From Paramicrosporidium saccamoebae KSL3 (taxonomy: Eukaryota; Fungi; Cryptomycota), in the NCBI GenBank assembly GCA_002794465.1, contig MTSL01000146.1, positions 12,628 to 44,627 on the forward strand: DNA of 32,000 nucleotides, given 5' to 3'. The translations under genes were made by a program, and so were the position numbers. Every line of letters begins with the position of its first letter. Position 1 is the first letter of the stretch. The notes under the pieces are model-generated. The model was given only the letters and a program-made list of their open reading frames with translations. It searched no databases and was not told the origin of the DNA. Below are positions 12,750 to 25,017 of the stretch, piece after piece.

Positions 12750-13570
12750 ATGCCACTCCCAAAGTCCAAAGCGTTTTGGGCATTTGCATCAACAGTTTCC
12801 ATTTCAGTGGTAGCTGTTCTTTATGACCGGCAGAGGTTGAAGGCCGTTAGAAGCCGTTATATTGAAGAAGCAACTGCCATGGGACTGCAGCCTTTGTTGC
12901 AAGCACCTAGAAAAGTTACGCTAGTCTCCTTTGCCAATGATAACATTGAGGCTCGCAAGATTAGAAAGCTTTGGCGCTCTTATGCCGTTGATCTCTTTAC
13001 TTTTGCTGGATGCGATTACCAACTGATTGAATGCAATGCGGTAGCGCTGGATAAAGAGCTTGACAAGCGTCTTCCAGTGCCAGAGGGTGAAGCGCCACCC
13101 GAGGAAAAGACTATTGCAAAGTTGGTTACGCCGGATAATTGGATACGCCCTATGATGCTAGAGTGGATGCAGAGAATTAATGGAAAGAGCGCGCTGTTTC
13201 CGCTTCCCTCGGACACTACTGAGGCAACACTACTAAAGATGCGGCAGGAGATGCGACCTGAGCCAAAGAGTCTAACATTCTTTGAGGACGGGATTGTTGC
13301 CCTAGAAAGAAACTCTTATGGCTCCATGATAGACGGCGTAAGGGATTTCGATAGCGATGTAGGCACAAAGAGTGTGCCTCAACTGGGCTACATTCCTTGT
13401 GACACTGTTAAATCTTGGAGGTCGAGCATTTATTACGTACGATTGGGTTTGGTATTTTATATTTCTAGTTTTTCAGAAAGTCTGAATTGGCAGAGAAAAT
13501 TGGCCATGCTACTATGGATGTTTTGCGTGAAAGGGTCCGTCCCGACGGATACCATAAGAGTTATCATTAA
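12750..13570 (+). CDS. TIM54: Mitochondrial inner-membrane translocase TIM22-complex subunit Tim54
   Basis: LPKSKAFWAF-TM-YDR...PRKVTL...LWRSYAVDLFTFAGCDYQLI matches the Tim54 N-terminus. The 32-nt intron 13437..13468 gives IYYFFRKSELAEKIG...SYH*, with the stop ending at 13570. Confidence 0.75.
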
Positions 13571-13588
13571 AGCATTTTCTTTGTTCTC

Positions 13589-14364
13589 ATGGAATCATCA
13601 ACGGAGCTACGGAGCTTACTGGTAGACAATGCTGTTAAATTTTTGCAGGATCCCCAGGTGCGCAGTAGTAGCGTGGAGAGGCAGTTGACGTTTCTCAAGA
13701 GTAAGGGTCTAACTGAGGCTGAGATTGATGAGGCTATGAAGCGGGCAGGAAGCCTGATTAGCGCGACTGGCACTCCGCCGCCCTTGCCCTCAGGTCCGCC
13801 GCCAAGTCGAGCCATGGCACAGGCCAAGTTTGACTGGGGGAAACTTTTCCTTGTGCTTGCCTTCATCGGGAGCACTGGGGCGGCCTTGTCTCAGACAATA
13901 TTGGGGGTATGTTTGATCGGATTGCCTAATGCTAGAAATCGCTACTGGATTGGTGGAAGAGGATCAGAGCCAAAGTATCCGAATCGACTGGCATTAAGGA
14001 AGAGTTGGAAAAGATACGTGAAACGCAGGCTGCACTAGAAGTGAGTCTACAGAGTGTCGCTCAGCTACGTGAGACGCAGGCTGCATTAGAGGTGAGTCTA
14101 CAGAGTGTCGCTCAGATACAAAAGACACAGGCCGTGTTGGAGGCAAGCCTGCAGAATGTCTCTCAGATACAAAAGACACAGGGAACATTAGAGACAAACT
14201 TGCAAAATGTCAGTCAAAAGCTCACTGCGGACATTGAGGGACTAAAAGCCTCTCAAAACTATTTGTACCAGGATTTGGTTCGTGAACTTGAGGATTTGCG
14301 CGAAGAGGCCATCGCCACTGTGCCAATCAACGTCAATGATGATCAAGAAAAGGTACAAGTGTAA
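13589..14364 (+). CDS. PEX14: Peroxisomal membrane docking protein Pex14
   Basis: LVDNAVKFLQDPQV...FLKSKGLTEAEIDEAM (Pex14_N), a Pro-rich linker and a TM segment. The 29-nt intron 13907..13935 joins the coiled-coil ORF 14005..14364. Confidence 0.9.
14020..14217 (+). repeat. 51-bp (17-aa) coding tandem repeat x4 in the PEX14 coiled coil
   Basis: Units start at 14020, 14071, 14122 and 14173: ETQAALEVSLQSVAQLR / ETQAALEVSLQSVAQIQ / KTQAVLEASLQNVSQIQ / KTQGTLETNLQNVSQ. Confidence 0.9.
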
Positions 14365-14470
14365 ATAATGGGTTATACCGAACCAGACAGTAAGGCGATA
14401 AAGGTCCTTTAATGTTTAACACCAAACCCTTATCGAATTAATCTTTGTCATAATCCCTGCTACGGCTGCG

Positions 14471-15284
14471 ATGGCAAACTACATAGACGTTGGTCAGCCC
14501 AACTCGACCTTATATATACAGAACCTGAATGAAAGAGTTACTCCAAAAAGTCTGTGTAGTCAGTTGAAAAAGACATTTGGAGTGTTTGGAGAGATTCTTG
14601 ACGTTGTCGCGAAACGACGTGTGGCCTTGCGGGGACAGGCTTTTGTTCTGTTCCGAGACATGGAGGCGGCTCGCCAGGCCATAGAGACCCTTCAGGGAGA
14701 TAGATTATATGGAAAATCAATGGTGATCAAATATGCAAAATACAAGTCAGACGTCATCAGCAAAGCTGATGGCACATATGAGATTGAGAGGCGTCGACGC
14801 GAGCAGGACAGGAGTAAGCCGTTGGGGATGATTCGCTTACTTTTTAGTTGAACGGTCGCGTCATCCCCGCATGACCCGGAGACAAATGCTAGCGCAAATG
14901 GCCGCTAACCCGGGAATGCAAGGAATGTCAAGTTTGCCCATGGCCGGCTTGCCAATGCACATGGGACCTGGAATGGGCGGATTTGGGATGAGTGGGCCTG
15001 GAAGTGGTCCCTCCCTCGGGCCTCAAATGGTGGGAGGAGAGCTGCAGCTTCCAAACAAGGTCTTGTACTTGCAGAATCTGCCGGAAGGAACTACTGAGAA
15101 ACAACTTGTGGAAGTGTTTAAAAAATATCCAGGATTTGTAGAGATGCGCCTTGTGCCGAATCGTCCAGATGTAGCCTTTGCTGAATACGAGAGTGAGGCA
15201 CAGGCGGTTGTTGCTCGCCAGGCTGCCGAAACACACGAAATTCAACCCGGAGTCAATCTGCGGGTGGCATTTGCACGTCGCTGA
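14471..15284 (+). CDS. U1A/U2B'' family snRNP protein (two RRMs)
   Basis: PNSTLYIQNLNE...LRGQAFVLF...MVIKYAKYKSD and PNKVLYLQNLPE...FVEMRLVPNRPDVAFAEY. 34-nt intron 14814..14847. U1A and U2B'' cannot be separated by eye. Confidence 0.9.
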
Positions 15285-15489
15285 CCACAGAAAGCACAGT
15301 AGATAGCTATCAATGTGAGCTGTGAGATTTGACTTTTGACGTTTGGAATTTGATACTCGACATTTGATATTCGATATTTGAGCTTTGAAGGGCTATACAT
15401 AAACTAATAAACCCTACTCACTGGGGATGCTCGAGTCAACCATGGCAGCTGTCTCAATGTGAGATGTGCTATCTATGGACTAACAAGCT

Positions 15490-15780
15490 TTACTCACTGA
15501 TGACGTTTGGATCAATTTTTACAGATATGAGCCGTCTGTACTTTTCGATAAATTCAGTCCTTGTCTGTATTTCGTCTTGTACCTTTTTTCGGTCTTTCAG
15601 GGCGACAGTCGAATCGTAAGGCTTTTGAATATCTGGCAATCGGTTCATGTACTGTTCAAGAGTATCCATTTTCTGAAGTAGGCCATTGCAAACATTAAGT
15701 ATCTTTCCGTAGTTGTTATGATTATCCAACAACTCTAGGACGTGAATAAGGTCAATGGTTAGCTCGCTATTATCCAACAT
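15490..15780 (-). CDS. Small helical protein, possibly Mediator subunit Med9-like
   Basis: ATG at 15780, 96 aa. LLQKMDTLEQYMNRLPDI...VQDEIQTRTEFIEKYRRL resembles the Med9 pattern (K-x-q...lPGI...l-eqir-k-ell-kY). By-eye match only. Confidence 0.4.
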   Translation of the reverse strand: MLDNSELTIDLIHVLELLDNHNNYGKILNVCNGLLQKMDTLEQYMNRLPDIQKPYDSTVALKDRKKVQDEIQTRTEFIEKYRRLISVKIDPNVISE

Positions 15781-15954
15781 GAACAAGTGAGCGAGTGAGC
15801 GAGTAGCGATATATCAAACCAAGGCAAGAACTGAGGTTTGACGAGCCAAAAAGTCGGTACCTGACGAGTCTACTATTTTCAAAAGTTGAACTGTAACGGA
15901 CCAACGCTTAGTCTTTAAAAACTCGAACTAACAATTCACAGCAACAAAAGTTAA

Positions 15955-16952
15955 TTAATTGTGGTTTGTACCAGATTCTGCTAGAATAAACTGTACAGTT
16001 GCAGCCAAATCAAATTTGGGCGACCATTCCCAGTCTTTTCTGGCATTACTGTCATCAAGTATGTGAGGCCAGCTATCAGCAATAGCCTGTCTATGATCAG
16101 GCTTATAGTTAACAGACATGGTCTTTCCCGTTGCCGTTTCAATTGCGGCCCGTAGTGTTCCAGGATTGAAAGACATTGCTTGAATGTTGTAGACGGACCT
16201 AGTCAGTCTTTCACGAGGCACCGACATTAGCTTGATTATGCCTTCAATACAGTCGTCAATATGAACCATGGGGAGCGTAGTGTCGGCACGCAGGAAACAA
16301 TTATACTCGCCGGAGATGGCGGCACGAACCATCTCGATGGCATAATCTATCGACTATTAGTATTGCAAGACTGAAAAACCTGTGGTTCCAGTCCCAGCAG
16401 ACGCATTGGCAGAGAGAACTCCAGGGAGTCGGATCGATCTAAAGTCGACTCCATATCGGCGATGAAAGTAGTCACCCAAGAGCTCGTTGTATACCTTGGT
16501 CGTTCCGTACAGGAACTGAGGTGCCATGATGGTTGTATCAGAGGCCGTCTTAGGCGTATCAGGTCCGAATGCAGCAATTGTGGACGGGCAGAATAGACGG
16601 AAACGGTACTTTTGCGCCAGCTGCAGCATGTGGACAAAGCTGTCGACATTGACCTTTAGGGTTCTGACAGCAGCAGACCAGTCCTTCTCCGCTGCCCCAG
16701 ATAGGATTGCAGGCAGATGAAAAACCCACTCGGGCTTATAGTCTTCAATAATCTTTTTCGCATTTTTCATAATGGTAATGTCACTTTGTTCAAACGTGCC
16801 AATGTGTTCCGGACCGGTGGCAGAAATGTCCACTCCAACCACAGTGGCGCCTTTGAAGGCTTTGCTCAAGGCTGTCCCAATTTGACCGTTGCATCCTACA
16901 ACGTCATCGTATGTGAAGGTGTGCCTGTGATCAGAACTCGAGATGGCGTCAT
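15955..16952 (-). CDS. TDH: L-threonine 3-dehydrogenase, SDR/NAD-epimerase type
   Basis: The spliced product starts MTPSRVLITGCNGQIG (GxxGxxG) and contains PSTIAAFG, YGTTK (YxxxK), FRSIRLPG, GTTDYAIEM, RQAIADSWP and DDSNARKDW. Introns 16896..16924 (GC-AG, 29 nt) and 16347..16379 (GT-AG, 33 nt). Confidence 0.88.
16896..16924 (-). other. GC-AG intron (29 nt) in TDH
   Basis: gcacaccttc...gttgtag. Removal restores the Rossmann motif VLITGCNGQIG; unspliced, the frame stops at TAG. Confidence 0.75.
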
Positions 16953-17002
16953 TTAGCACTGCAATAAGGACAGGGGGAGTAGGAGTAGAGTCGGGGTTTA
17001 TT
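16953..17002. promoter_or_regulatory. Putative 50-bp bidirectional promoter between TDH and KBL
   Basis: Only 50 nt separate the TDH ATG (16952, -) and the KBL ATG (17003, +). The spacer is purine-rich on the + strand (ggacagggggagtaggagtagagtcgggg). Promoter function is inferred. Confidence 0.55.
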
Positions 17003-18296
17003 ATGTTGGGAATCTTTCGACCATCATTGCAGCTATTGTCCCGTAGCCAATTTTACAAGAGGCTAGTGCAAGATTTGGATGCCATGAAAGCATCTGGGCT
17101 GTACAAAGACGAGCAAGTCATTGCCTCTCCCCAATCCAACAGTGTAAAGGTGCAAGGGGAAAATTTGATTAATTTCTGTGCCAACAACTATCTCGGTCTT
17201 TCAAACCATCCTGGTAATATTGAAAACGCCATGTAATTCCCGTAGAGCTTGTTGAGGCTGGAAAGCATGCCTTGGAGTCTCGTGGGGCGGGGATGAGCTC
17301 GGTGAGATTTATTTGTGGTACGCAAGACCTTCACAAGAAGCTGGAGGCAAAAATTTCCGAATTCCATGGAACCGATGACACAATTCTCTACACGAGTTGT
17401 TTTGATGCAAATGCAGGTATTTTCGAAACATTGCTGGGAGCAGAAGATGCAGTCATTTCTGATGCCCTAAATCACGCATCCATAATTGATGGAATACGAC
17501 TTTGTAAAGCGCAAAGATTGCGTTACAAGCACAATGATATGGATGACCTCGAGAGATTATTGAAGGATAATCGAGAAAAGGCCCGGACCATGCTTATCGC
17601 AACTGATGGCGTATTTAGCATGGATGGCGACTTGGCCAAGCTGCCCGAAATCTGTCATTTAGCTCGAAAATACGATGCGCTTGTGTTTGTAGATGACAGT
17701 CACGCCACTGGGTTCATTGGTTCTACGGGTCGCGGAACGGCAGAGCATTTTAATCTCGAAAAGGAGGTGGACATTATCTCTTCCACTCTTGGAAAGGCGC
17801 TTGGAGGCTCGTCCGGTAAGTCACTTTGGGAGCGTTGGTTCATCTTCTAGGCGGGTATACCACAGGACGATCTGAGGTCATATCTACTCTTCGACAGCGC
17901 AGCCGGCCATATTTATTCTCCAACAGCCTTCCTCCGGTGATTGCCTCGTTTGCGCTGAAAGCACTGGAGCTCGTATCTTCTCGGCCGGAACTTTGTATTG
18001 CTGTAAATGAAAATGCGGTGCATTTCCGAAAAAGCATGACAGCCAAAGGATTCAAGATTATGGGAAACGCCAGTCATCCCATTTGTCCAGTACTGATTGG
18101 CGACGCCGTGATTGCCGGCAAGATGGCCGCAGAACTGCGAGCTTGTGGCATATTTGTGATTGCATTTAGCTACCCCGTGGTGCCTCACGACCTTGCTCGA
18201 ATCCGCGTCCAATTATCGGCTTCTCACACCAAAAAGCAAATTGACAATGCTGTTGCAGAATTCGAGCGTATAGGCAAGAAATATAATGTTATCTAA
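17003..18296 (+). CDS. KBL: 2-amino-3-ketobutyrate CoA ligase (glycine C-acetyltransferase)
   Basis: [63 protein letters not shown] (PLP Lys), [20 protein letters not shown]. Introns 17214..17245 (32 nt) and 17816..17850 (35 nt). N-terminus [15 protein letters not shown] resembles a presequence. Confidence 0.93.
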
Positions 18297-18579
18297 AGTG
18301 AATAATGTGATTGTGCGATTAGGCGATTATGCGGTGAGGCGATTGGGGGGCTGTGGGCAGTCTTACGAAGCGGTAGTAAAAGTGTGCAACGTGACACCTG
18401 TGTAGTGTGATAAAGTCTGTTTTTGCACCTATCAAGGAATCTGGTAATAAGAGAGGCCCCTTGAAAGTCCGTGATATGTTCTTTGTGACTGGTGAGCGAT
18501 GAACAGGTTTTGTATTATGCGAACATTAGTTGCCCATAACAACATTATCACTATCCGAGACGTGTATATTTCCACAATC

Positions 18580-19569
18580 CTACTGGCTTACAATGCTGTC
18601 ATGTGTTCCAAAGAGTTTGTGGACTGAATCATATATCCAGGTGGGGAACAGTCGTGCGATTGAAATAATCATCATGAATCGGGGTAGCCAAACCTCTATG
18701 CGTCCGGTCTCAATAGCATCTACAATCTGTTGGGCCACAAAAGATACTGTGAGGGTGGGTAGTAGACTTTTAAAATTCCACTTTACCTTGCCGCGGAACA
18801 TGGCAGTATCTACATGAAATGGGCATATAATTGTTGTTGTCACACCCGAGCATCCATCTGCCTGCAGCTCTAATCTTAGGGATTCATTCATCCCATACAA
18901 TGCAAATTTGCTGGCACAGTAGTCGGCTACAAGTAAATGTGCAAAAAGTACCTAGTACTCATTTTTGCCACTCCCCCAATACCCAAGATGGACGAAATGT
19001 TGACAATGCGTCCAAAATTCTTCTCAATCATTTGGGGAAGGAATTTTTTGATGAGTCGGAATGGTCCCATTACATTCACATTCAAGACATTTTGAATTTC
19101 CTGATCTGACAGTTCGCCTATTCGTTTCCCCCTGTTCCAAATTCCCGCATTATTGACAAGGATTGTCGGGGCTACGTTCTAGATATTGAAAAGTGTATCA
19201 CAACACGTACCTTTGACACGAGAGCGGCTGCCAAGTTGTCGATACTTTCTGCATCACCAACATTGCACTCGATGTATTGTACATCTATGGCTGGAATCTA
19301 TATAAACAATGTGCATACTTTTTGGCAGTTCCCAGTCTGGCCGAGCTATGTCAGCGATTATTATTTTAGAGCATCCGCGTTTAGCACAAATATTAACAAC
19401 CATCTGCCCAATTCCTTGAGACCCTATCGTGAAAATGAAATGTACAAATTGTACCTCCGGTAACTAGCAGAGTTTGCTCCTCCCATAGAAACGCCCTGCG
19501 GGTAGAGTTCTTGTAGTGTAGGATGCAATAGGACACTATGAAGACTACCGGAGCCAGCAGGAACAGCAT
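18580..19569 (-). CDS. Membrane-anchored short-chain dehydrogenase (RDH10/17beta-HSD11-like)
   Basis: The spliced product has an N-terminal TM (MLFLLAPVVFIVSYCIL), VTGGSQGIG, LVNNAGI, NISS and DYCASKFA. Four GT-AG introns: 19424..19454, 19291..19318, 19179..19210, 18927..18958. It is absent from the ORF track except for the last exon. Confidence 0.85.
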
Positions 19570-19860
19570 GTGGAAAACGGAAAACTATAAAGTATGGTTT
19601 TTAGTAATAAGAGTTTTCTTTCCATCTGGCAAGGTGTGTGTAGTTTGAGATGATAAGGGATTCATGCATAAAAGCTGTTTATCAAATCCATGAACCTTAC
19701 AGTTACGAGAGTACGTTGTGTAACATGCTATGAAATTGTATATTATGTCATGATGTCATTCAGACCGCGCTATAACACACTATACCATAGTACACGAAAC
19801 TCCGACGACCCCCGCAGCGTGGGCTTCCCCCCATCCCTGGTCGACTCATAGTGGCTGTGG

Positions 19861-21048
19861 ATGATCGTCTCTCTAAAGACCTTTGGTGTATTTTGGAGTT
19901 TTGGCTTCTTTCTGGTTGCATACAGCAAGGAAGCAGATGAACCCTTTCTGAAAGGGAATAAGACGGCCATTCCGGAACCCCAAAGGCCTGCGGACAAAGT
20001 ATCTGCAAAGTATGAATATGTATACACTTATGAAGATTCGGAGGAAACAAAGGACGACAAGAGGACTGACAAGAGGACTGGCAAGAGAACTGGCAAGAGA
20101 ACTGATAAACGAACGGATAGAAGGGCTGGAAAAAGAGAGCCGCCGCCAGCAAACGAGTACTCTTATCCGTATCGTCCAAAGTTTCCGGCCCACCCGTCGT
20201 TGGGGTACTGCAAACTGCAAGACTTTAAATTTGGCGAGTCGGATCGACTCGGAAAGGGGGGCTTTGGCCAGGTGTACAAGGCTGTCCATAAGAGTGGAAA
20301 GACGGTAGCCATCAAGCATACACTTGCACAGTCGATAAAGGACAAGCCAAATCATGTGGAGAATGAGGAAACTATTCATAGAATCCTGCAAAATGCCTTT
20401 ATTGGCCAGTTGTTGTGCACGATGAAAAACTCGAAAAATGACATTTTCTTTGCTCTGGAATACTTTCCAGGCGGCGATATGTACAAGCAACTCTTGACAT
20501 ACCATCCGTATAGCCAGGCCGTGCTGGCCAAGTATGTCGCTCAGATAGTCCTGGCTCTTCGATACATGCACTCCAACTGCGTTGTGTATCGCGATTTGAA
20601 GGCTGAGAACATTATGATAGACGAGAATGACAACATCAAACTCGGCGATCTTGGACTGGCTAAATACGACTGTGATAATGAACTGTACAACCTAGCCGGC
20701 ACCGTCGAGTACCTAGCCCCCGAAGTTGCTGGCAAACGAAAGTATGGCAGGGCCTGTGATTACTACTCACTCGCTGTCCTAGTCTATTTCCTCCAGTCTG
20801 GCAAGCTTCCTTACAGGCACAAGAAGGATCAGAAAGACGTGTTTATTAAGCAATTGGCAACCGGCAAGCAAAAGATACCGAGTACTGGTAATGCAGCTGC
20901 AGATGAGCTTATTGGCGTTCTTGCTGACTATGATCCTGTACAAAGGTGGTCCAATGTGTATGTAAATTTTGACAAGTTCAAGAAGCTTTCCTACTTTAAC
21001 GGTCTCGACTGGAATATTCTCGAGGAAATTTCGGCCAACCAGCTCTAA
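19861..21048 (+). CDS. AGC-like Ser/Thr protein kinase with N-terminal signal-peptide-like segment
   Basis: GKGGFGQVY, VAIK, YRDLKAEN, KLGDLG, GTVEYLAPE, DYYSL. N-terminus MIVSLKTFGVFWSFGFFLVAYS. Intronless. Confidence 0.85.
   Translation: MIVSLKTFGVFWSFGFFLVAYSKEADEPFLKGNKTAIPEPQRPADKVSAKYEYVYTYEDSEETKDDKRTDKRTGKRTGKRTDKRTDRRAGKREPPPANEYSYPYRPKFPAHPSLGYCKLQDFKFGESDRLGKGGFGQVYKAVHKSGKTVAIKHTLAQSIKDKPNHVENEETIHRILQNAFIGQLLCTMKNSKNDIFFALEYFPGGDMYKQLLTYHPYSQAVLAKYVAQIVLALRYMHSNCVVYRDLKAENIMIDENDNIKLGDLGLAKYDCDNELYNLAGTVEYLAPEVAGKRKYGRACDYYSLAVLVYFLQSGKLPYRHKKDQKDVFIKQLATGKQKIPSTGNAAADELIGVLADYDPVQRWSNVYVNFDKFKKLSYFNGLDWNILEEISANQL
20056..20136 (+). repeat. 12-bp coding repeat (D/G)KRT x7 in the kinase N-terminal region
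   Basis: gacaagaggact gacaagaggact ggcaagagaact ggcaagagaact... encodes DKRTDKRTGKRTGKRTDKRTDRRAGKR. Confidence 0.9.
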
Positions 21049-21370
21049 ATACACTATAAAAGCGTGAGATTGGAGCTAGGAAGATGATAAAAGCACGTTT
21101 TATTGCCAATTCAACAGCCCATTTATAATATCTATAATAGGTTAGAGCAGAGTAGTGTTCTTTCCATAATTGACCCATTTTATGAGGTTTGAGTAAAGAC
21201 CCCTTTATTGGTATTCCTAGCCCGTAGATGTGCAAGAAAAAGCGCGCTTATTATCACTGGTCAACATTTATGGCCTTTACGGTGTGCAGTAGCCAGATTT
21301 AAACGCGGGCTTCAATACATTTCACAAATGTCATACCTTTAAACCAAGCCATTGCATCAAAGGTTGCGGA

Positions 21371-22674
21371 TCAGAAAGAAAGAGGCTTGGGGCGCTCCCA
21401 AGCAAATTCGTCGCGACCAAAGTGCCCATAGCATGCAGTCTGTTGAAAGATGGGCTTGTCCAGGTGCAAATCACGAGCTATTGCGCCGGGTCGCAGGTCA
21501 AAGTTTTGGTGAATCAGATTTACCAGTTGAGGGGTGCTCAGCTTGCTAGTCCCATAGGTATCGACATGGATTGACAACGGCATCACCAGACCGATCGAGT
21601 ATGATAACTGCAAATATTAAAAAGTAGTCTGATATCTACCTGAATTAAGCAGCGGCGTGCGAGACCGGACGCGACTATCGATTTTGCAATCCAACGGGCG
21701 GCATACGCAGCTGAACGGTCAACTTTTGTCCAGTCCTTTCCGGAAAAGGCTCCGCCGCCATGCGCACCCCATCCTCCATATGTATCAACAATGATTTTGC
21801 GACCGGTAAGTCCGGCGTCACTTTGGGGCCCTCCTATTACAAACTTGCCTGACGGCTGTATGTGATAGATGGTATTATCATCGAGATATTGGCGAGGAAT
21901 GACAGCCTTGATCACTGATTCCAGGAGCAATTCTTTCATCTCTGATAGCGACACGTCTTCAGAGTGCTGGGCTGACAAGACGACTGTGTGGACTCGGAGT
22001 GGGACAGTGGCTCCATTTTCCATCTTGTATTCTACAGTGACTTGCGATTTGCAATCGGGCCTTAACCAAGACAGCTCTCCGCTGCGTCGGGCATGGGCCA
22101 GTTTTGCGGCCAATTTGTGTGAAAGGACCAGAGAGAGGGGCATTAGCTCGGGCGTCTCGTCAGTCGCATAGCCAAACATGATTCCTTGGTCTCCAGCACC
22201 GGTATCGACGACATCACCATCCACCTTTGTCAGACTTTGGCTAATATCTGGGCTTTGCTCTTCCACTGCGACGAGCACATTGCATGTTTTGTAATCAAAC
22301 CCTGTGGACATGAGATGTAAGCGGGGTATACCTTTTTGACTGTCATCGTATCCAATGCGCCTAATGGTGTCTCGACAAATCTTTTGAAAATCAAGCTTTG
22401 CAGTCGATGTAATCTCTCCAAAGACCATGACCATTCCCGTTTTTACGGCAGTTTCGCAGGCAACACGACTAAAAGGGTCTTGCTCGAGGCATGCGTCCAG
22501 GACGGCGTCGGAAATTTGGTCGCAAATCTTGTCTATTATTTGGTCATACAGCAACACTGGTGTACCTGGATGCCCTTCTCCAACAGATTCCGAGGTAAAG
22601 AGAAAGTGCCCAGCCTCCAAAACTGGGATCTGAATAGTTGGTAAATGTCCGTTACTCATTATAATGCCGGGCAT
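21371..22674 (-). CDS. SAM1: S-adenosylmethionine synthetase (methionine adenosyltransferase)
   Basis: [54 protein letters not shown]. Introns 22533..22565, 22302..22331 and 21608..21639. Start is 22674 or 22659. Confidence 0.96.
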
Positions 22675-23163
22675 AGGCGAGTGCGTCCGACAGTGACCCT
22701 CGTAGGGGAGGGCCTAATTTACCGTTTTGGGATGTAATGCAATAGAATTTTTCCGTTATCCTGTAACCTAACAGAGGCTGTCGCGTAGTGGGGTGAGACG
22801 AAGCGAGATGGGGCGAGATGAAACAAAATGAAATGAAAACTTGTTCACTGCTAATCCTAAAATTGCAAGGATACAGCTTCCACTGTTCTCAAATACTCGG
22901 CTAATCAATCCTTTACATCACAAGACAGTATTAGCTCTGGTAAGTGTGAGGTTGGTTAATAAGACCCATTATTAAAATTCTTGAGCTTTAGTAATCCCTT
23001 TGCTATGAGACACAATTTACCGCTTTTGGTTGTAATGCTAATGCTATAAATCGCAGGGGGAGCATGCGCTGGAGGTTGCCCATACTGACGCGTCCCCTCA
23101 CCCACTACAAACGTCTTGTACAGAAAAGTGTTATGCGTGGGGTTTGTGCTGTAACTGTTAGAA

Positions 23164-24537
23164 ATGGTTTCAACAGTCCCCAAGATTAGTGTTGAAAATC
23201 CAGTTGTTGACTTGGATGGTGATGAAATGACTCGTATTATTTGGAAAATGATAAAGGACAAGGTAAAAAGTCTATCCATTTCCCAAGTTGTAGCTTATTA
23301 CTCCATTCGTCGATGTGGAAATCTTGTCATTCGACTTGGGCTTACCGAACAGAGATGCCACTAACGACCAAGTTACTGTTGATGCTGCAAATGCCATTCG
23401 CAAGCACAATGTCGGAATCAAGTGCGCCACCATTACTCCGGACGAAGACCGAGTAAAAGGTGCTCTAGGTAGTAGTGCTCATGGTTCCTAGAGTTTAATC
23501 TGAAGAAAATGTGGAAGAGTCCTAACGGAACCATCCGATCTATTTTGAATGGGACAGTGTTTCGCGAGCCCATTGTTCTTGAAAAGATTCCGCGCATTGT
23601 CCCTGGATGGCAAAAGCCGATTATTATTGGGCGTCACGCGTTTGGCGACCAGTACCAGGCGGTTGATCTGGTGATTGACCAGCCCGGAAAGGTGGAACTA
23701 GTTTTCACCCCCAACTCTTCTGGATCAGAGGCCCAACGACACTTGATCCACGATTTTTCCAGCAGTGGGGTCGCACTGGGAATGTTTAACAAGTCTGATT
23801 CAATTGAAGGATTTGCCCGCTCCTGCATGAACCTGGCATTGTCTCGAGGTATGCCTTTGTACATGAGTACCAAGAATACAATTTTGAAAAAGTACGACGG
23901 CCATTTCAAGGACATTTTCGAGGCAGTCTACCAAAAGCAATAAGGACTCTGGCCAGTGCTAACTATTAGGGACTTTAAGCAGAAGTTTGAAAGTGCTGGC
24001 CTTTTCTATGAGCATCGGCTGATCGACGATATGGTGGCTCAGGCTCTCAAGTCTAGCGGCGGTTTTGTTTGGGCTACTAAGAACTATGATGGTGATGTTC
24101 AATCGGACATTCTTGCGCAAGGATTTGGAAGCCTGGGACTCATGACTAGCGTGTTGACCACTCCAGACGGAAAGACTATTGAAGCAGAGGCAGCCCATGG
24201 CACAGTCACCCGTCACTACCGCGAGCATCAAAAGGGCCGTGAAACGAGCACCAACCCGATTGCAAGCATCTTTGCCTGGACCCGTGGGCTGGCGCATCGT
24301 GCAAAGCTCGATAACAATCCTAAACTTGGCGAGTTTTGCCAAGTGTTGGAGTCGGTCTGTCGTGATATCATTGACATTGATGGCAAGATGACCAAAGATT
24401 TGGCCTTGGCGATCCATGGCGCCAAATTGCAACGTTCCCATTACCTGAACACTGAAGAGTTCCTGACTGCCATTGAAGACAAATTGCGAGGGGCATGGTT
24501 ACAGCGAGTGGCCGACCTTGGCATGTCCAAGCTGTGA
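23164..24537 (+). CDS. IDH1: NADP-dependent isocitrate dehydrogenase with C-terminal PTS1 (SKL)
   Basis: [64 protein letters not shown]. Ends GMSKL*. Introns 23263..23293, 23460..23491 and 23937..23969 (GC-AG). Confidence 0.95.
23937..23969 (+). other. GC-AG intron (33 nt) in IDH
   Basis: gcaata...gctaactattag contains an in-frame TAA and a GCTAAC branch point. Removal restores AVYQKDFKQKFE. Confidence 0.85.
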
Positions 24538-25017
24538 GACGAGATGTATCAATTAACGCTAGGCCTTTACATGAGCCTCCAAATTGCGGCGGAGACCAAA
24601 TAAAGGAGCTTTTTAACTGATAGTTGTAGTCGCGCTGATGGACTACCTGTCACATTTTTGGAAAAGATTTTACCAAGGACGCTAGGAAATCCCTGTAACT
24701 AGGCTATAGTGATAACGCGGAGCACTATCCAAGCAGATGGTAGTTGATAACAACTTGCCGCTTGCTATTTATCCAGTCACACAACTGATCTACTCGAGAA
24801 ATTCAAATTTATACTAATCGATTTGGAGACTTTATGGCTATTGCATTATTAGTGCCCAGCACTCTAGGCCGCTGTCGGTATATGCATTTCCAAGATACTC
24901 AATGTTCACGAATCTAGAGTTTATTGAAAGAAAGGTTATCTTGATTTATCAGTGATGTAAGCGCCTGAATTATCAGGGTACTCGAGAGGCATGCCAGTAC
25001 AACTTTTGGTGCAATCC

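What the first reader, a model, noticed from the sequence alone, without database searches (positions are those of the whole stretch)
19861..21048. Signal-peptide-bearing AGC-like kinase: candidate secreted effector
Seen: the N-terminal 22 aa (MIVSLKTFGVFWSFGFFLVAYS) look like a cleavable signal peptide, followed by a charged linker and a kinase domain with the Gly loop, VAIK, YRDLKAEN and APE intact. The DFG motif is DLG. The activation-loop residue equivalent to PKA Thr197 (TWT-LCGTPEY) is Asn (LYN-LAGTVEY). The protein ends just after YFNGLDW, before the AGC C-terminal tail and hydrophobic motif. The gene is intronless among intron-containing neighbours. Established: ordinary AGC kinases are cytosolic and need activation-loop phosphorylation and their C-tail; secreted kinases are known parasite effectors (e.g. 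Toxoplasma ROP kinases). Inference: a deregulated kinase exported to act on host proteins.
Basis: partly seen in the sequence, partly recalled or inferred. Interest (0 to 1): 0.75.

Follow-up and report, generated by a model that had tools for sequence, protein, structure and literature searches.

The report
Signal-peptide AGC-like kinase of a rozellid parasite
This gene of the amoeba-nucleus parasite Paramicrosporidium saccamoebae encodes an intact PKA-like protein kinase that has lost its regulatory tail and carries a secretion signal; the same design is kept in a whole family of relatives from Paramicrosporidium-like organisms, so it very probably works outside the parasite's cytoplasm, possibly on host proteins.

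Summary
Window 19861-21048 (+) is an intronless 395-aa ORF in Paramicrosporidium saccamoebae contig MTSL01000146.1. It reads, in order: a signal-like N-terminus, a disordered basic linker, a conserved 26-aa extension, and an intact protein kinase closest to PKA, RSK, Akt and PDK1. DFG is DLG, the PKA-Thr197 position is Asn, and the AGC C-tail is missing.

New here: the gene belongs to a discrete family of about 37 proteins, none from another named organism. 34 of 38 carry an N-terminal hydrophobic segment whose sequence is not conserved, against 4 of 27 unrelated kinases. Three relatives lie in the same gene neighbourhood, so this is a single-copy, vertically inherited gene under purifying selection (dN/dS 0.09). 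It is not an expanded, fast-evolving effector family.

Two distant relatives add a C-terminal membrane helix with a basic tail, which puts the kinase on the exoplasmic side. One cysteine pair is invariant. A second pair is present together or lost together (29 both, 8 neither, 1 single), as a disulfide would be.

Secretory targeting is well supported. Export to the host nucleus is plausible, because rozellids grow as naked protoplasts, but it is unproven. Verdict: a new variant of a known kind (secreted parasite kinases).

The parts
19861..21048 (+). Whole gene: intronless ORF, 395 aa plus stop
   Evidence: dN/dS is 0.087 against the 82%-identical ortholog P0001/L012.
19861..19926 (+). Predicted cleavable signal peptide, residues 1-22
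   Evidence: n-region charge +1, 16-aa uncharged hydrophobic run, Ala(-3)/Ser(-1). A comparable segment is present in 34 of 38 family proteins, against 4 of 27 unrelated kinases and 6 of 120 Dbp5 proteins.
19927..20154 (+). Disordered, basic and dibasic-rich linker, residues 23-98; a possible pro-region
   Evidence: pLDDT below 50 for residues 21-93. Length and sequence vary across the family. Dibasic pairs: 62 observed, 47.7 expected; N-glycosylation sequons: 16 observed, 11.7 expected.
20047..20105 (+). 12-bp tandem repeat (about 5 copies) inside the linker, encoding a repeated four-residue T-[D/G]-K-R unit
   Evidence: TRF. The closest ortholog P0001 has a 19-residue gap relative to the query, which the alignment places in this part of the linker.
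20155..20232 (+). Family-specific N-terminal extension, residues 99-124, with invariant Tyr104, Pro106, Cys117 and Phe122
   Evidence: Conservation. pLDDT is above 90, with short beta bridges at 110-111 and 115-116.
20233..21018 (+). Protein kinase catalytic domain, residues 125-386, AGC-like
   Evidence: Pfam, PDB sequence search, Foldseek hits to Aurora A, PKG, PKA, Akt, PDK1 and RSK2 with TM 0.72-0.87 normalised to the target.
20569..20724 (+). Catalytic loop to APE, residues 237-288. Contains Cys240 just before beta6, YRD, DLG, Cys271 two residues after beta9, and Asn277 at the PKA Thr197 position.
   Evidence: Cys240 and Cys271 are both present in 29 proteins, both absent in 8, and only one is present in 1.
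21019..21048 (+). Nine-residue C-terminal stub and stop codon. No AGC tail, no H/KDEL, no hydrophobic C-terminus.

Best explanation
Shown: the gene encodes a catalytically intact, tail-less, PKA-like Ser/Thr kinase with an N-terminal secretory signal. It is a single-copy, syntenic gene under purifying selection in Paramicrosporidium-like Rozellomycota. Inferred mechanism: the protein enters the ER and the signal peptide is cut after about Ser22. The disordered basic linker may be trimmed at dibasic sites. The compact module (residues about 99-395) folds in the oxidising lumen. The conserved N-terminal extension packs on the N-lobe beside edge strand beta4, tied by Cys117-Cys186, where AGC kinases normally dock their own C-tail. 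Cys240-Cys271 ties the start of the activation segment to the strand before the catalytic loop, so the active conformation would not need T-loop phosphorylation (Asn277 replaces the phospho-Thr). With no ER-retention signal, membrane anchor or GPI signal, the kinase follows the default route out of the cell. The parasite grows as a naked protoplast inside the host nucleus, so a secreted protein would meet host nucleoplasm, where ATP and substrates are available. The most likely role is phosphorylation of proteins at the host-parasite interface or of host nuclear proteins.
For: The kinase is intact and AGC-like. The start codon is secure, and five orthologous loci show the same arrangement of first ATG after an in-frame stop. 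The N-terminal hydrophobic segment is conserved as a property but not as sequence, often ending in Ala-x-Ala-like sites: 34 of 38 family proteins against 4 of 27 and 6 of 120 controls. Distant relatives P0185 and P0192 have a signal segment, the kinase, a C-terminal TM helix and a basic tail, which places the kinase on the exoplasmic side. P0192 lies on a rozellid contig: its neighbouring Dbp5 is 74% identical to P. saccamoebae Dbp5, and the best other named fungus reaches 59%. Cys117 and Cys186 are invariant in all 38. Cys240 and Cys271 are co-present in 29, co-absent in 8 and single in 1, Fisher p 1.8e-7, uncorrected for phylogeny, with at least three separate double losses inside the core family. 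In the AF2 model the extension is ordered (pLDDT above 90), Cys117 follows a beta bridge, Cys186 lies in beta4, Cys240 precedes beta6 and Cys271 follows beta9. The family has no C-tail, no Pkinase_C hit and no H/KDEL. Synteny holds in L002, L005/L006 and L007. dN/dS is 0.087 overall and 0.06-0.08 in the linker, extension and kinase. [quoted passage not shown] Kinases are among the predicted host-exposed proteins of microsporidia (PMC5423893).
Against: No dedicated signal-peptide predictor could be run and there is no experimental localisation. A canonical PKA-like outgroup (P0190) also aligns Cys at the 117 and 186 columns, which weakens that pair as a marker of an oxidising compartment. N-glycosylation sequons in the linker are not clearly enriched (16 vs 11.7). 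The gene evolves at a middling rate compared with its syntenic neighbours (56% identity vs 46-78%). It is single-copy, which is unlike typical host-directed effectors and would equally fit a housekeeping role in the parasite's own secretory pathway. Disulfides would be exposed to a reducing environment in host nucleoplasm. Four family gene models lack the hydrophobic N-terminus; their starts may be miscalled, but this was not checked.
Confidence: 0.6

Rival explanations
1. The kinase enters the secretory pathway but works for the parasite itself. It would phosphorylate the parasite's own secreted cargo (spore wall, polar filament or surface proteins) in the ER/Golgi lumen or at the cell surface. 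This is the role Fam20C-type Golgi kinases play in animals, here taken by an AGC-derived fold.
For: All the evidence for secretory targeting applies equally. Single copy, conserved synteny, low dN/dS and a middling evolutionary rate are what a conserved cell-biological function would show. The TM-anchored relatives would stay on parasite membranes. The spores have a polar filament whose proteins are unidentified (PMC5701793).
Against: There is no ER or Golgi retention signal or membrane anchor in the query or the core family. No family member was found in any other named organism's annotated proteome, fungal or microsporidian, which is odd for a general secretory function. There is no similarity to Fam20, FJ or VLK families.
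Confidence: 0.25
2. The N-terminal hydrophobic segment is an uncleaved membrane anchor. The protein would then be an ordinary signalling kinase tethered to a parasite membrane rather than a soluble secreted enzyme.
For: Signal peptides and signal anchors cannot be told apart with certainty from sequence heuristics. A few family members have long uncharged runs of 21-31 aa.
Against: The query's hydrophobic run is only 16 residues and ends with small residues at -3 and -1. Many relatives end in Ala-x-Ala-like sites. The flanking charges (+1 before, net negative after) would orient even an uncleaved segment with the kinase on the exoplasmic side. Relatives with a real C-terminal TM still keep the N-terminal segment, as type I proteins do. 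The Cys covariation points to an oxidising compartment.
Confidence: 0.1
3. Annotation artefact: the true protein starts elsewhere, through an upstream spliced exon or another start, or the gene is a decaying duplicate of the parasite's PKA, so the 'signal peptide' has no function.
For: No transcript evidence for this gene could be inspected. An AG dinucleotide lies between the upstream stop and the ATG, so an upstream exon cannot be formally excluded.
Against: dN/dS is 0.087, with all catalytic residues intact. The first-ATG-after-stop arrangement is seen in five loci. The next Met is inside the kinase domain. The hydrophobic N-terminus is kept across orthologs at 39-82% identity although its sequence changes.
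Confidence: 0.05

Closest known systems
cAMP-dependent protein kinase catalytic subunit (PKA C-alpha, yeast Tpk1) and other AGC kinases (RSK2 N-terminal kinase, Akt, PKG)
   Same: These are the best sequence and fold matches: about 30% identity, E about 1e-38, TM 0.72-0.76 normalised to the target. Shared signatures are the Asp-Phe before beta1, YRDLK.EN, G-T-x-E-Y-L-A-P-E, and the F-x-x-x-D-W motif that closes the kinase domain.
   Different: This protein has an N-terminal secretory signal and no C-terminal tail (no turn motif, no hydrophobic motif, no Pkinase_C). Asn replaces the T-loop Thr, DLG replaces DFG, and it has a family-specific N-terminal extension and conserved cysteines.
PDK1 and Aurora A (kinases without a hydrophobic motif of their own, whose N-lobe pocket is filled by a partner)
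   Same: Both are among the best fold matches, TM 0.84-0.87 normalised to the target. Like them, this kinase has no hydrophobic motif of its own.
   Different: Here a conserved segment of the same chain, the N-terminal extension, is proposed to fill that role. This is an inference, because the docking site could not be measured. PDK1 and Aurora A are cytosolic or nuclear and are regulated by T-loop phosphorylation (established knowledge).
Secreted kinases of intracellular parasites: Toxoplasma ROP and WNG kinases, Plasmodium FIKK kinases, the Phytophthora CRN8 kinase effector (named from my own knowledge), and the predicted host-exposed kinases of microsporidia (PMC5423893)
   Same: The architecture is a signal sequence followed by a kinase domain in an obligate intracellular parasite. 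Family-specific N-terminal extensions are also a feature of ROP kinases (established knowledge).
   Different: There is no specific sequence relationship: none of them appears among the 60 best sequence matches or the 50 best fold matches. This is a single-copy, syntenic, slowly evolving gene rather than an expanded polymorphic family. It is AGC-derived.
Secretory-pathway kinases of animals (Fam20C, VLK/PKDCC, Four-jointed)
   Same: They are signal-bearing kinases that fold with disulfides and act in the lumen or outside the cell (established knowledge).
   Different: Their fold families are unrelated or very distant, and there are no Pfam hits to them. This protein is a canonical eukaryotic protein kinase of AGC type.

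Membership tests
Eukaryotic protein kinase, catalytically competent | Gly-rich loop, beta3 Lys, alpha-C Glu, catalytic Asp and Asn, metal-binding Asp of DFG, APE | tested here: met
   G131-G136, K152, E169, D245, N250, D263 and E288 are all present. K152, E169, D245, N250 and D263 are invariant across 39 aligned sequences. The DFG Phe is Leu here and is F, L, Y, V, M or W across the family.
AGC kinase group | Catalytic core most similar to the AGC kinases PKA, PKG, Akt, RSK and PDK1 | tested here: met
   The top 60 PDB sequence hits are all PKA, RSK2 N-terminal kinase or Tpk1. The top fold hits are Aurora A, PKG, PKA, Akt, PDK1 and RSK2.
AGC kinase group | C-terminal tail (AGC C-terminal domain) with turn motif and hydrophobic motif F-x-x-F | tested here: not met
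   The protein ends 11 residues after Trp384, where PKA continues for about 45 more. There is no Pkinase_C hit in the query or in nine relatives. The PKA-like control P0190 also gave no Pkinase_C hit, so the Pfam test alone has little power.
AGC kinase group | Phosphorylatable Thr/Ser in the activation loop at the PDK1 site (PKA Thr197) | tested here: not met
   Asn277 aligns with Thr197. Across the family this column is mostly Asn, sometimes Ser.
Secretory (signal-peptide) proteins | N-terminal positive n-region, 7-15+ residue hydrophobic core, small residues at -3 and -1 | tested here: met
   Heuristic only: K6, a 16-aa uncharged run, A20 and S22. The property is conserved in 34 of 38 family proteins, against 4 of 27 and 6 of 120 controls. 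SignalP and DeepTMHMM were not available.
Secretory (signal-peptide) proteins | Experimental evidence of translocation or secretion | not testable with these tools
   No localisation or proteomic data are available. The P. saccamoebae genome paper reports no secretome analysis.
ER-resident lumenal proteins | C-terminal H/KDEL-type retrieval signal | tested here: not met
   The query has no H/KDEL-type C-terminus. None of the family C-termini is K/HDEL-like.
Toxoplasma ROPK-type secreted kinases | Specific sequence or fold relationship to ROP2, ROP5 or ROP18 | tested here: not met
   None appears among the 60 best sequence matches or the 50 best fold matches, all of which are AGC or Aurora kinases.
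Microsporidian predicted host-exposed kinase families (Reinke et al. 2017) | Homology to those families; expansion to at least 10 paralogs with signal-peptide or TM enrichment | not tested
   Their sequences were not at hand. The family here shows only one syntenic copy per examined locus, and no named microsporidian protein appeared among its relatives.

The most novel reading that the evidence does not exclude
An undescribed lineage of exoplasmic AGC-derived kinases, confined to Paramicrosporidium-like Rozellomycota, in which the two classical AGC control devices have been replaced by built-in structural ones. A covalently tethered N-terminal extension would take the place of the C-tail and hydrophobic motif, and a disulfide across beta6 and beta9 would take the place of T-loop phosphorylation. 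The result would be a constitutively active kinase that the naked intranuclear parasite releases into the host nucleus, or displays on its surface in the TM-anchored relatives.
Probability: 0.3. Interest if true: 0.75.

Novelty: new variant of a known kind. Interest (0 to 1): 0.55.

Why it matters
Almost nothing is known about how rozellids, the deepest fungal relatives of microsporidia, manipulate their hosts. The P. saccamoebae genome paper contains no secretome or effector analysis, and four literature searches found no description of this family. A conserved, single-copy kinase addressed to the secretory pathway gives a concrete, traceable candidate for the host-parasite interface of an intranuclear parasite. 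It would also show how an AGC kinase can be rebuilt to work without its tail and without T-loop phosphorylation, which bears on kinase regulation in general. If instead it serves the parasite's own secretory pathway, it would be a fungal-lineage counterpart of animal Golgi kinases built on a different fold.

Tried and rejected
1. N-glycosylation sequon enrichment in the linker, as a sign of ER translocation: 16 observed against 11.7 expected, not convincing.
2. Dibasic-site enrichment: 62 against 47.7, modest. The Kex2-type pro-region idea stays an inference.
3. A remnant AGC tail in the family members that carry about 45 extra C-terminal residues: no Pkinase_C hit, but the PKA-like control gave none either.
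4. Paralogs in P. saccamoebae: neither word search, with the query or with the distant relative P0192, returned another protein named as P. saccamoebae. The whole genome could not be scanned, so paralogs are not excluded.
5. Identity of assemblies GCA_047514055.1, GCA_041443045.1, GCA_020047435.1 and GCA_020049755.1: no paper mentions them.
6. Expression data: the supplements of PMC5701793 are small tables without per-gene expression.
7. RNA structure as the cause of the unusually conserved 5' end: z-score 0.01, rejected.
8. Measuring Cys-Cys distances: the structure tool returns no coordinates.
9. A classical monopartite nuclear localisation signal in the linker: by eye the repeat does not fit K-K/R-x-K/R, and the repeat is absent from the closest ortholog, so no NLS claim is made.
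10. The intronless state as a sign of retroposition or transfer: the orthologs are also single-exon and sit in conserved synteny, so this is an old resident gene.

Full report
**Origin of the window**

The exact protein is encoded on NCBI contig MTSL01000146.1 of assembly GCA_002794465.1. MTSL is the accession of the Paramicrosporidium saccamoebae genome, a 7.3 Mb, 47% GC genome of an intranuclear parasite of Saccamoeba in the Rozellomycota (PMC5701793). The window's GC content of 43-52% fits.

**Checking the observation**

- ORF 19861-21048 (+) encodes 395 aa. An in-frame TAG lies four codons upstream. The next Met is residue 188, past the catalytic Lys.
- Pfam Pkinase covers residues 127-364 (E 3e-52), with no Pkinase_C hit.
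- The best solved-structure relatives are PKA C-alpha, the RSK2 N-terminal kinase and yeast Tpk1 (E down to 5e-38). The aligned region runs from residue about 123 to 387.
- That alignment places Asn277 opposite PKA Thr197. It ends where PKA still has about 45 tail residues; the query has nine.
- All catalytic residues are present, and DFG reads DLG.
- The gene model has one exon, while its neighbours have introns.

**A discrete family**

- The word-index search found 24 relatives at 39-82% identity (E 1e-73 to 1e-214), followed by a drop to E 1e-16.
- A profile of these, run against 1.84 billion representatives, added P0047, P0048, P0050, P0051, P0052, P0054 and P0073.
- At about the score of an ordinary PKA-like protein (P0190, 237 bits), it also added a set of more distant single-domain proteins: P0129, P0133, P0148, P0171, P0185 and P0192.
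- All members come from metagenomes, Logan assemblies or unannotated NCBI assemblies. None carries an organism name from nr or UniRef.

**Common architecture of the family**

1. An N-terminal hydrophobic segment.
2. A linker that varies in length and sequence and is rich in Ser, Lys, Pro, Thr and Arg.
3. A conserved pre-kinase extension with invariant Tyr104, Pro106, Cys117 and Phe122.
4. The kinase domain.
5. A short C-terminal end.

**The signal segment**

- In the query, K6 gives a +1 n-region. Residues 7-22 form a 16-residue uncharged hydrophobic run. Ala20 and Ser22 occupy the -3 and -1 positions, and the following residues are acidic overall.
- Across the family the sequence of this segment is not conserved, but its character is. 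34 of 38 proteins have a 10-residue Kyte-Doolittle mean of at least 1.6 near the N-terminus, many ending in Ala-x-Ala-like sites.
- The same measure is met by only 4 of 27 unrelated kinases and 6 of 120 Dbp5 helicases.
- Five orthologous loci all start at the first ATG after an in-frame stop.
- Against the 82%-identical ortholog (P0001, L012), dN/dS is 0.087 overall and 0.06-0.08 in the linker, extension and kinase. The whole ORF, including the linker, is therefore translated and constrained.

**Independent evidence on topology**

- P0185 and P0192 keep the N-terminal segment and the pre-kinase motif. They add a C-terminal hydrophobic helix (19-residue KD mean 2.2-2.6) followed by a basic tail. 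That is the layout of a type I membrane protein with the kinase on the exoplasmic side.
- The P0192 contig is rozellid. Its neighbouring Dbp5 is 74% identical to P. saccamoebae Dbp5, while the next named fungi reach at most 59%.
- The query and the core family have no such helix, no hydrophobic C-terminus and no H/KDEL. Default secretion is therefore expected.

**Cysteines**

- Cys117 (in the extension) and Cys186 (in beta4) are invariant in all 38 proteins.
- Cys240 and Cys271 are both present in 29 proteins, both absent in 8 and singly present in 1. Fisher p is 1.8e-7, not corrected for phylogeny.
- P0018, P0051 and P0052 are separate double losses within the core family.
- In the AF2 model (mean pLDDT 81.9; residues 101-395 mostly above 90; residues 21-93 below 50), the positions fit two disulfides:
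  - Cys240 immediately precedes the two-residue beta6 strand.
  - Cys271 follows the beta9 strand by two residues.
  - Cys117 follows a beta bridge in the extension.
  - Cys186 lies in beta4, the edge strand of the N-lobe sheet.
- One disulfide would tie the extension to the N-lobe. The other would tie the start of the activation segment to the strand before the catalytic loop.
- The tool gives no coordinates, so this remains an inference.
- The PKA-like outgroup also aligns Cys at columns 117 and 186, which is a caveat.

**Orthology and evolutionary rate**

- P0002 (56% identity) lies in a JGI metagenome contig with the same gene order as the window: Tim54, Pex14_N, RRM, epimerase, aminotransferase, short-chain dehydrogenase, kinase, SAM synthetase, dehydrogenase.
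- P0012 (assembly GCA_047514055.1) and the distant P0022 (45% identity) keep parts of the same neighbourhood.
- Kinase identity between the window and L005 is 56%. The neighbours range from 46% (Tim54) to 78% (SAM synthetase).
- The gene is thus an old, single-copy resident of this clade evolving at an ordinary rate. It is not an expanded, diversifying effector family.

**Fold and classification**

- Foldseek returns Aurora A, PKG, PKA, Akt, PDK1 and RSK2, with TM 0.72-0.87 normalised to the target.
- The core is AGC-like by sequence and fold. It carries AGC signatures at both ends of the domain.
- The defining AGC tail and the T-loop phospho-acceptor are both missing.
- I therefore call it AGC-derived and tail-less, not a regular AGC member.

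**Mechanism**

- Shown: an intact kinase, a conserved secretory signal, no retention or anchor signal, purifying selection, and type I relatives.
- Inferred: cleavage after Ser22, possible trimming of the dibasic-rich linker, two disulfides, the extension standing in for the C-tail, and activity without T-loop phosphorylation.
- Further inferred: because rozellids grow as naked protoplasts inside the host, and P. saccamoebae lives in the host nucleus (PMC5701793), a secreted or surface-displayed kinase would face host nucleoplasm, where ATP is available.
- Kinases are among the predicted host-exposed proteins in microsporidia (PMC5423893). A secreted kinase candidate has also been listed for Rhizophagus clarus (PMC4746824). 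The idea has precedents, but I found no description of this family.

**Rivals**

- A role on the parasite's own secreted cargo (0.25) fits the conservation pattern at least as well. It can only be separated from the effector reading by localisation.
- An uncleaved anchor (0.1) would still put the kinase outside, given the flanking charges.
- An annotation artefact (0.05) is contradicted by the selection and start-codon evidence.

**Limits**

- No SignalP or DeepTMHMM was available.
- No model coordinates were available.
- No whole-genome paralog scan was possible.
- No per-gene expression table was held.
- The environments and hosts of the metagenomic family members are unknown.
The gene is intact and belongs to a parasite of amoebae.

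**Verdict**

This is a new variant of a known kind. Interest 0.55.

Noticed in passing
window 18613-19169, minus strand: A short-chain dehydrogenase (adh_short) gene with an intron lies between the aminotransferase and the kinase. It is 58-59% identical to two adh_short ORFs at the same position in L005. It is absent from the genes called for this contig.
   Followed up: partly
window about 19800-19917, compared with L012 1-122: The roughly 60 nt upstream of the ATG and the first 57 coding nt are about 90% identical to the 82%-identity ortholog, while synonymous divergence in the rest of the gene is about 0.5. There is 1 synonymous change in 14.7 synonymous sites of the signal-peptide codons. 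No RNA structure signal was found (z 0.01), and the region is not conserved in more distant orthologs. The cause is unexplained.
   Followed up: partly
window 20047-20105: A 12-bp tandem repeat of about 5 copies inside the linker encodes a repeated four-residue T-[D/G]-K-R unit. The closest ortholog has a 19-residue gap in the linker and lacks the repeat, so this is a recent in-frame expansion.
   Followed up: yes
window 12750-15284 (+): The called gene here is one 655-aa product with Tim54, Pex14_N and RRM_1 hits. In the syntenic metagenome contig L005 these are three separate genes, so the P. saccamoebae model may be a fusion of neighbouring genes.
   Followed up: no
window about 12750-24540; L005, L006, L002, L007: A conserved microsynteny block is shared, with local inversions, by several Paramicrosporidium-like genomes known only from metagenomes. 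Its order is Tim54/Pex14/RRM, epimerase, aminotransferase, adh_short, kinase, SAM synthetase, Iso_dh.
   Followed up: partly
L007 12355-15678 (+): A 1107-aa ORF with endonuclease (Exo_endo_phos) and reverse transcriptase (RVT_1) domains lies two genes downstream of the kinase ortholog, in a Paramicrosporidium-like contig. This is the domain set of a non-LTR retrotransposon.
   Followed up: no
P0185, P0192 (L008 3428-4621), P0148: These distant signal-bearing relatives have His-Leu-Asp or His-Gly-Asp in place of the H/Y-R-D motif, making them non-RD kinases. They also lack the Cys240/Cys271 pair. Two of them carry a C-terminal membrane helix.
   Followed up: partly
Hits P0049, P0053, P0055, P0061, P0094, P0112 and others: Very long proteins (about 1,000-7,000 aa) with 3-10 separate kinase-domain matches rank high against the family profile because their domain scores add up. 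Their origin and nature were not examined.
   Followed up: no
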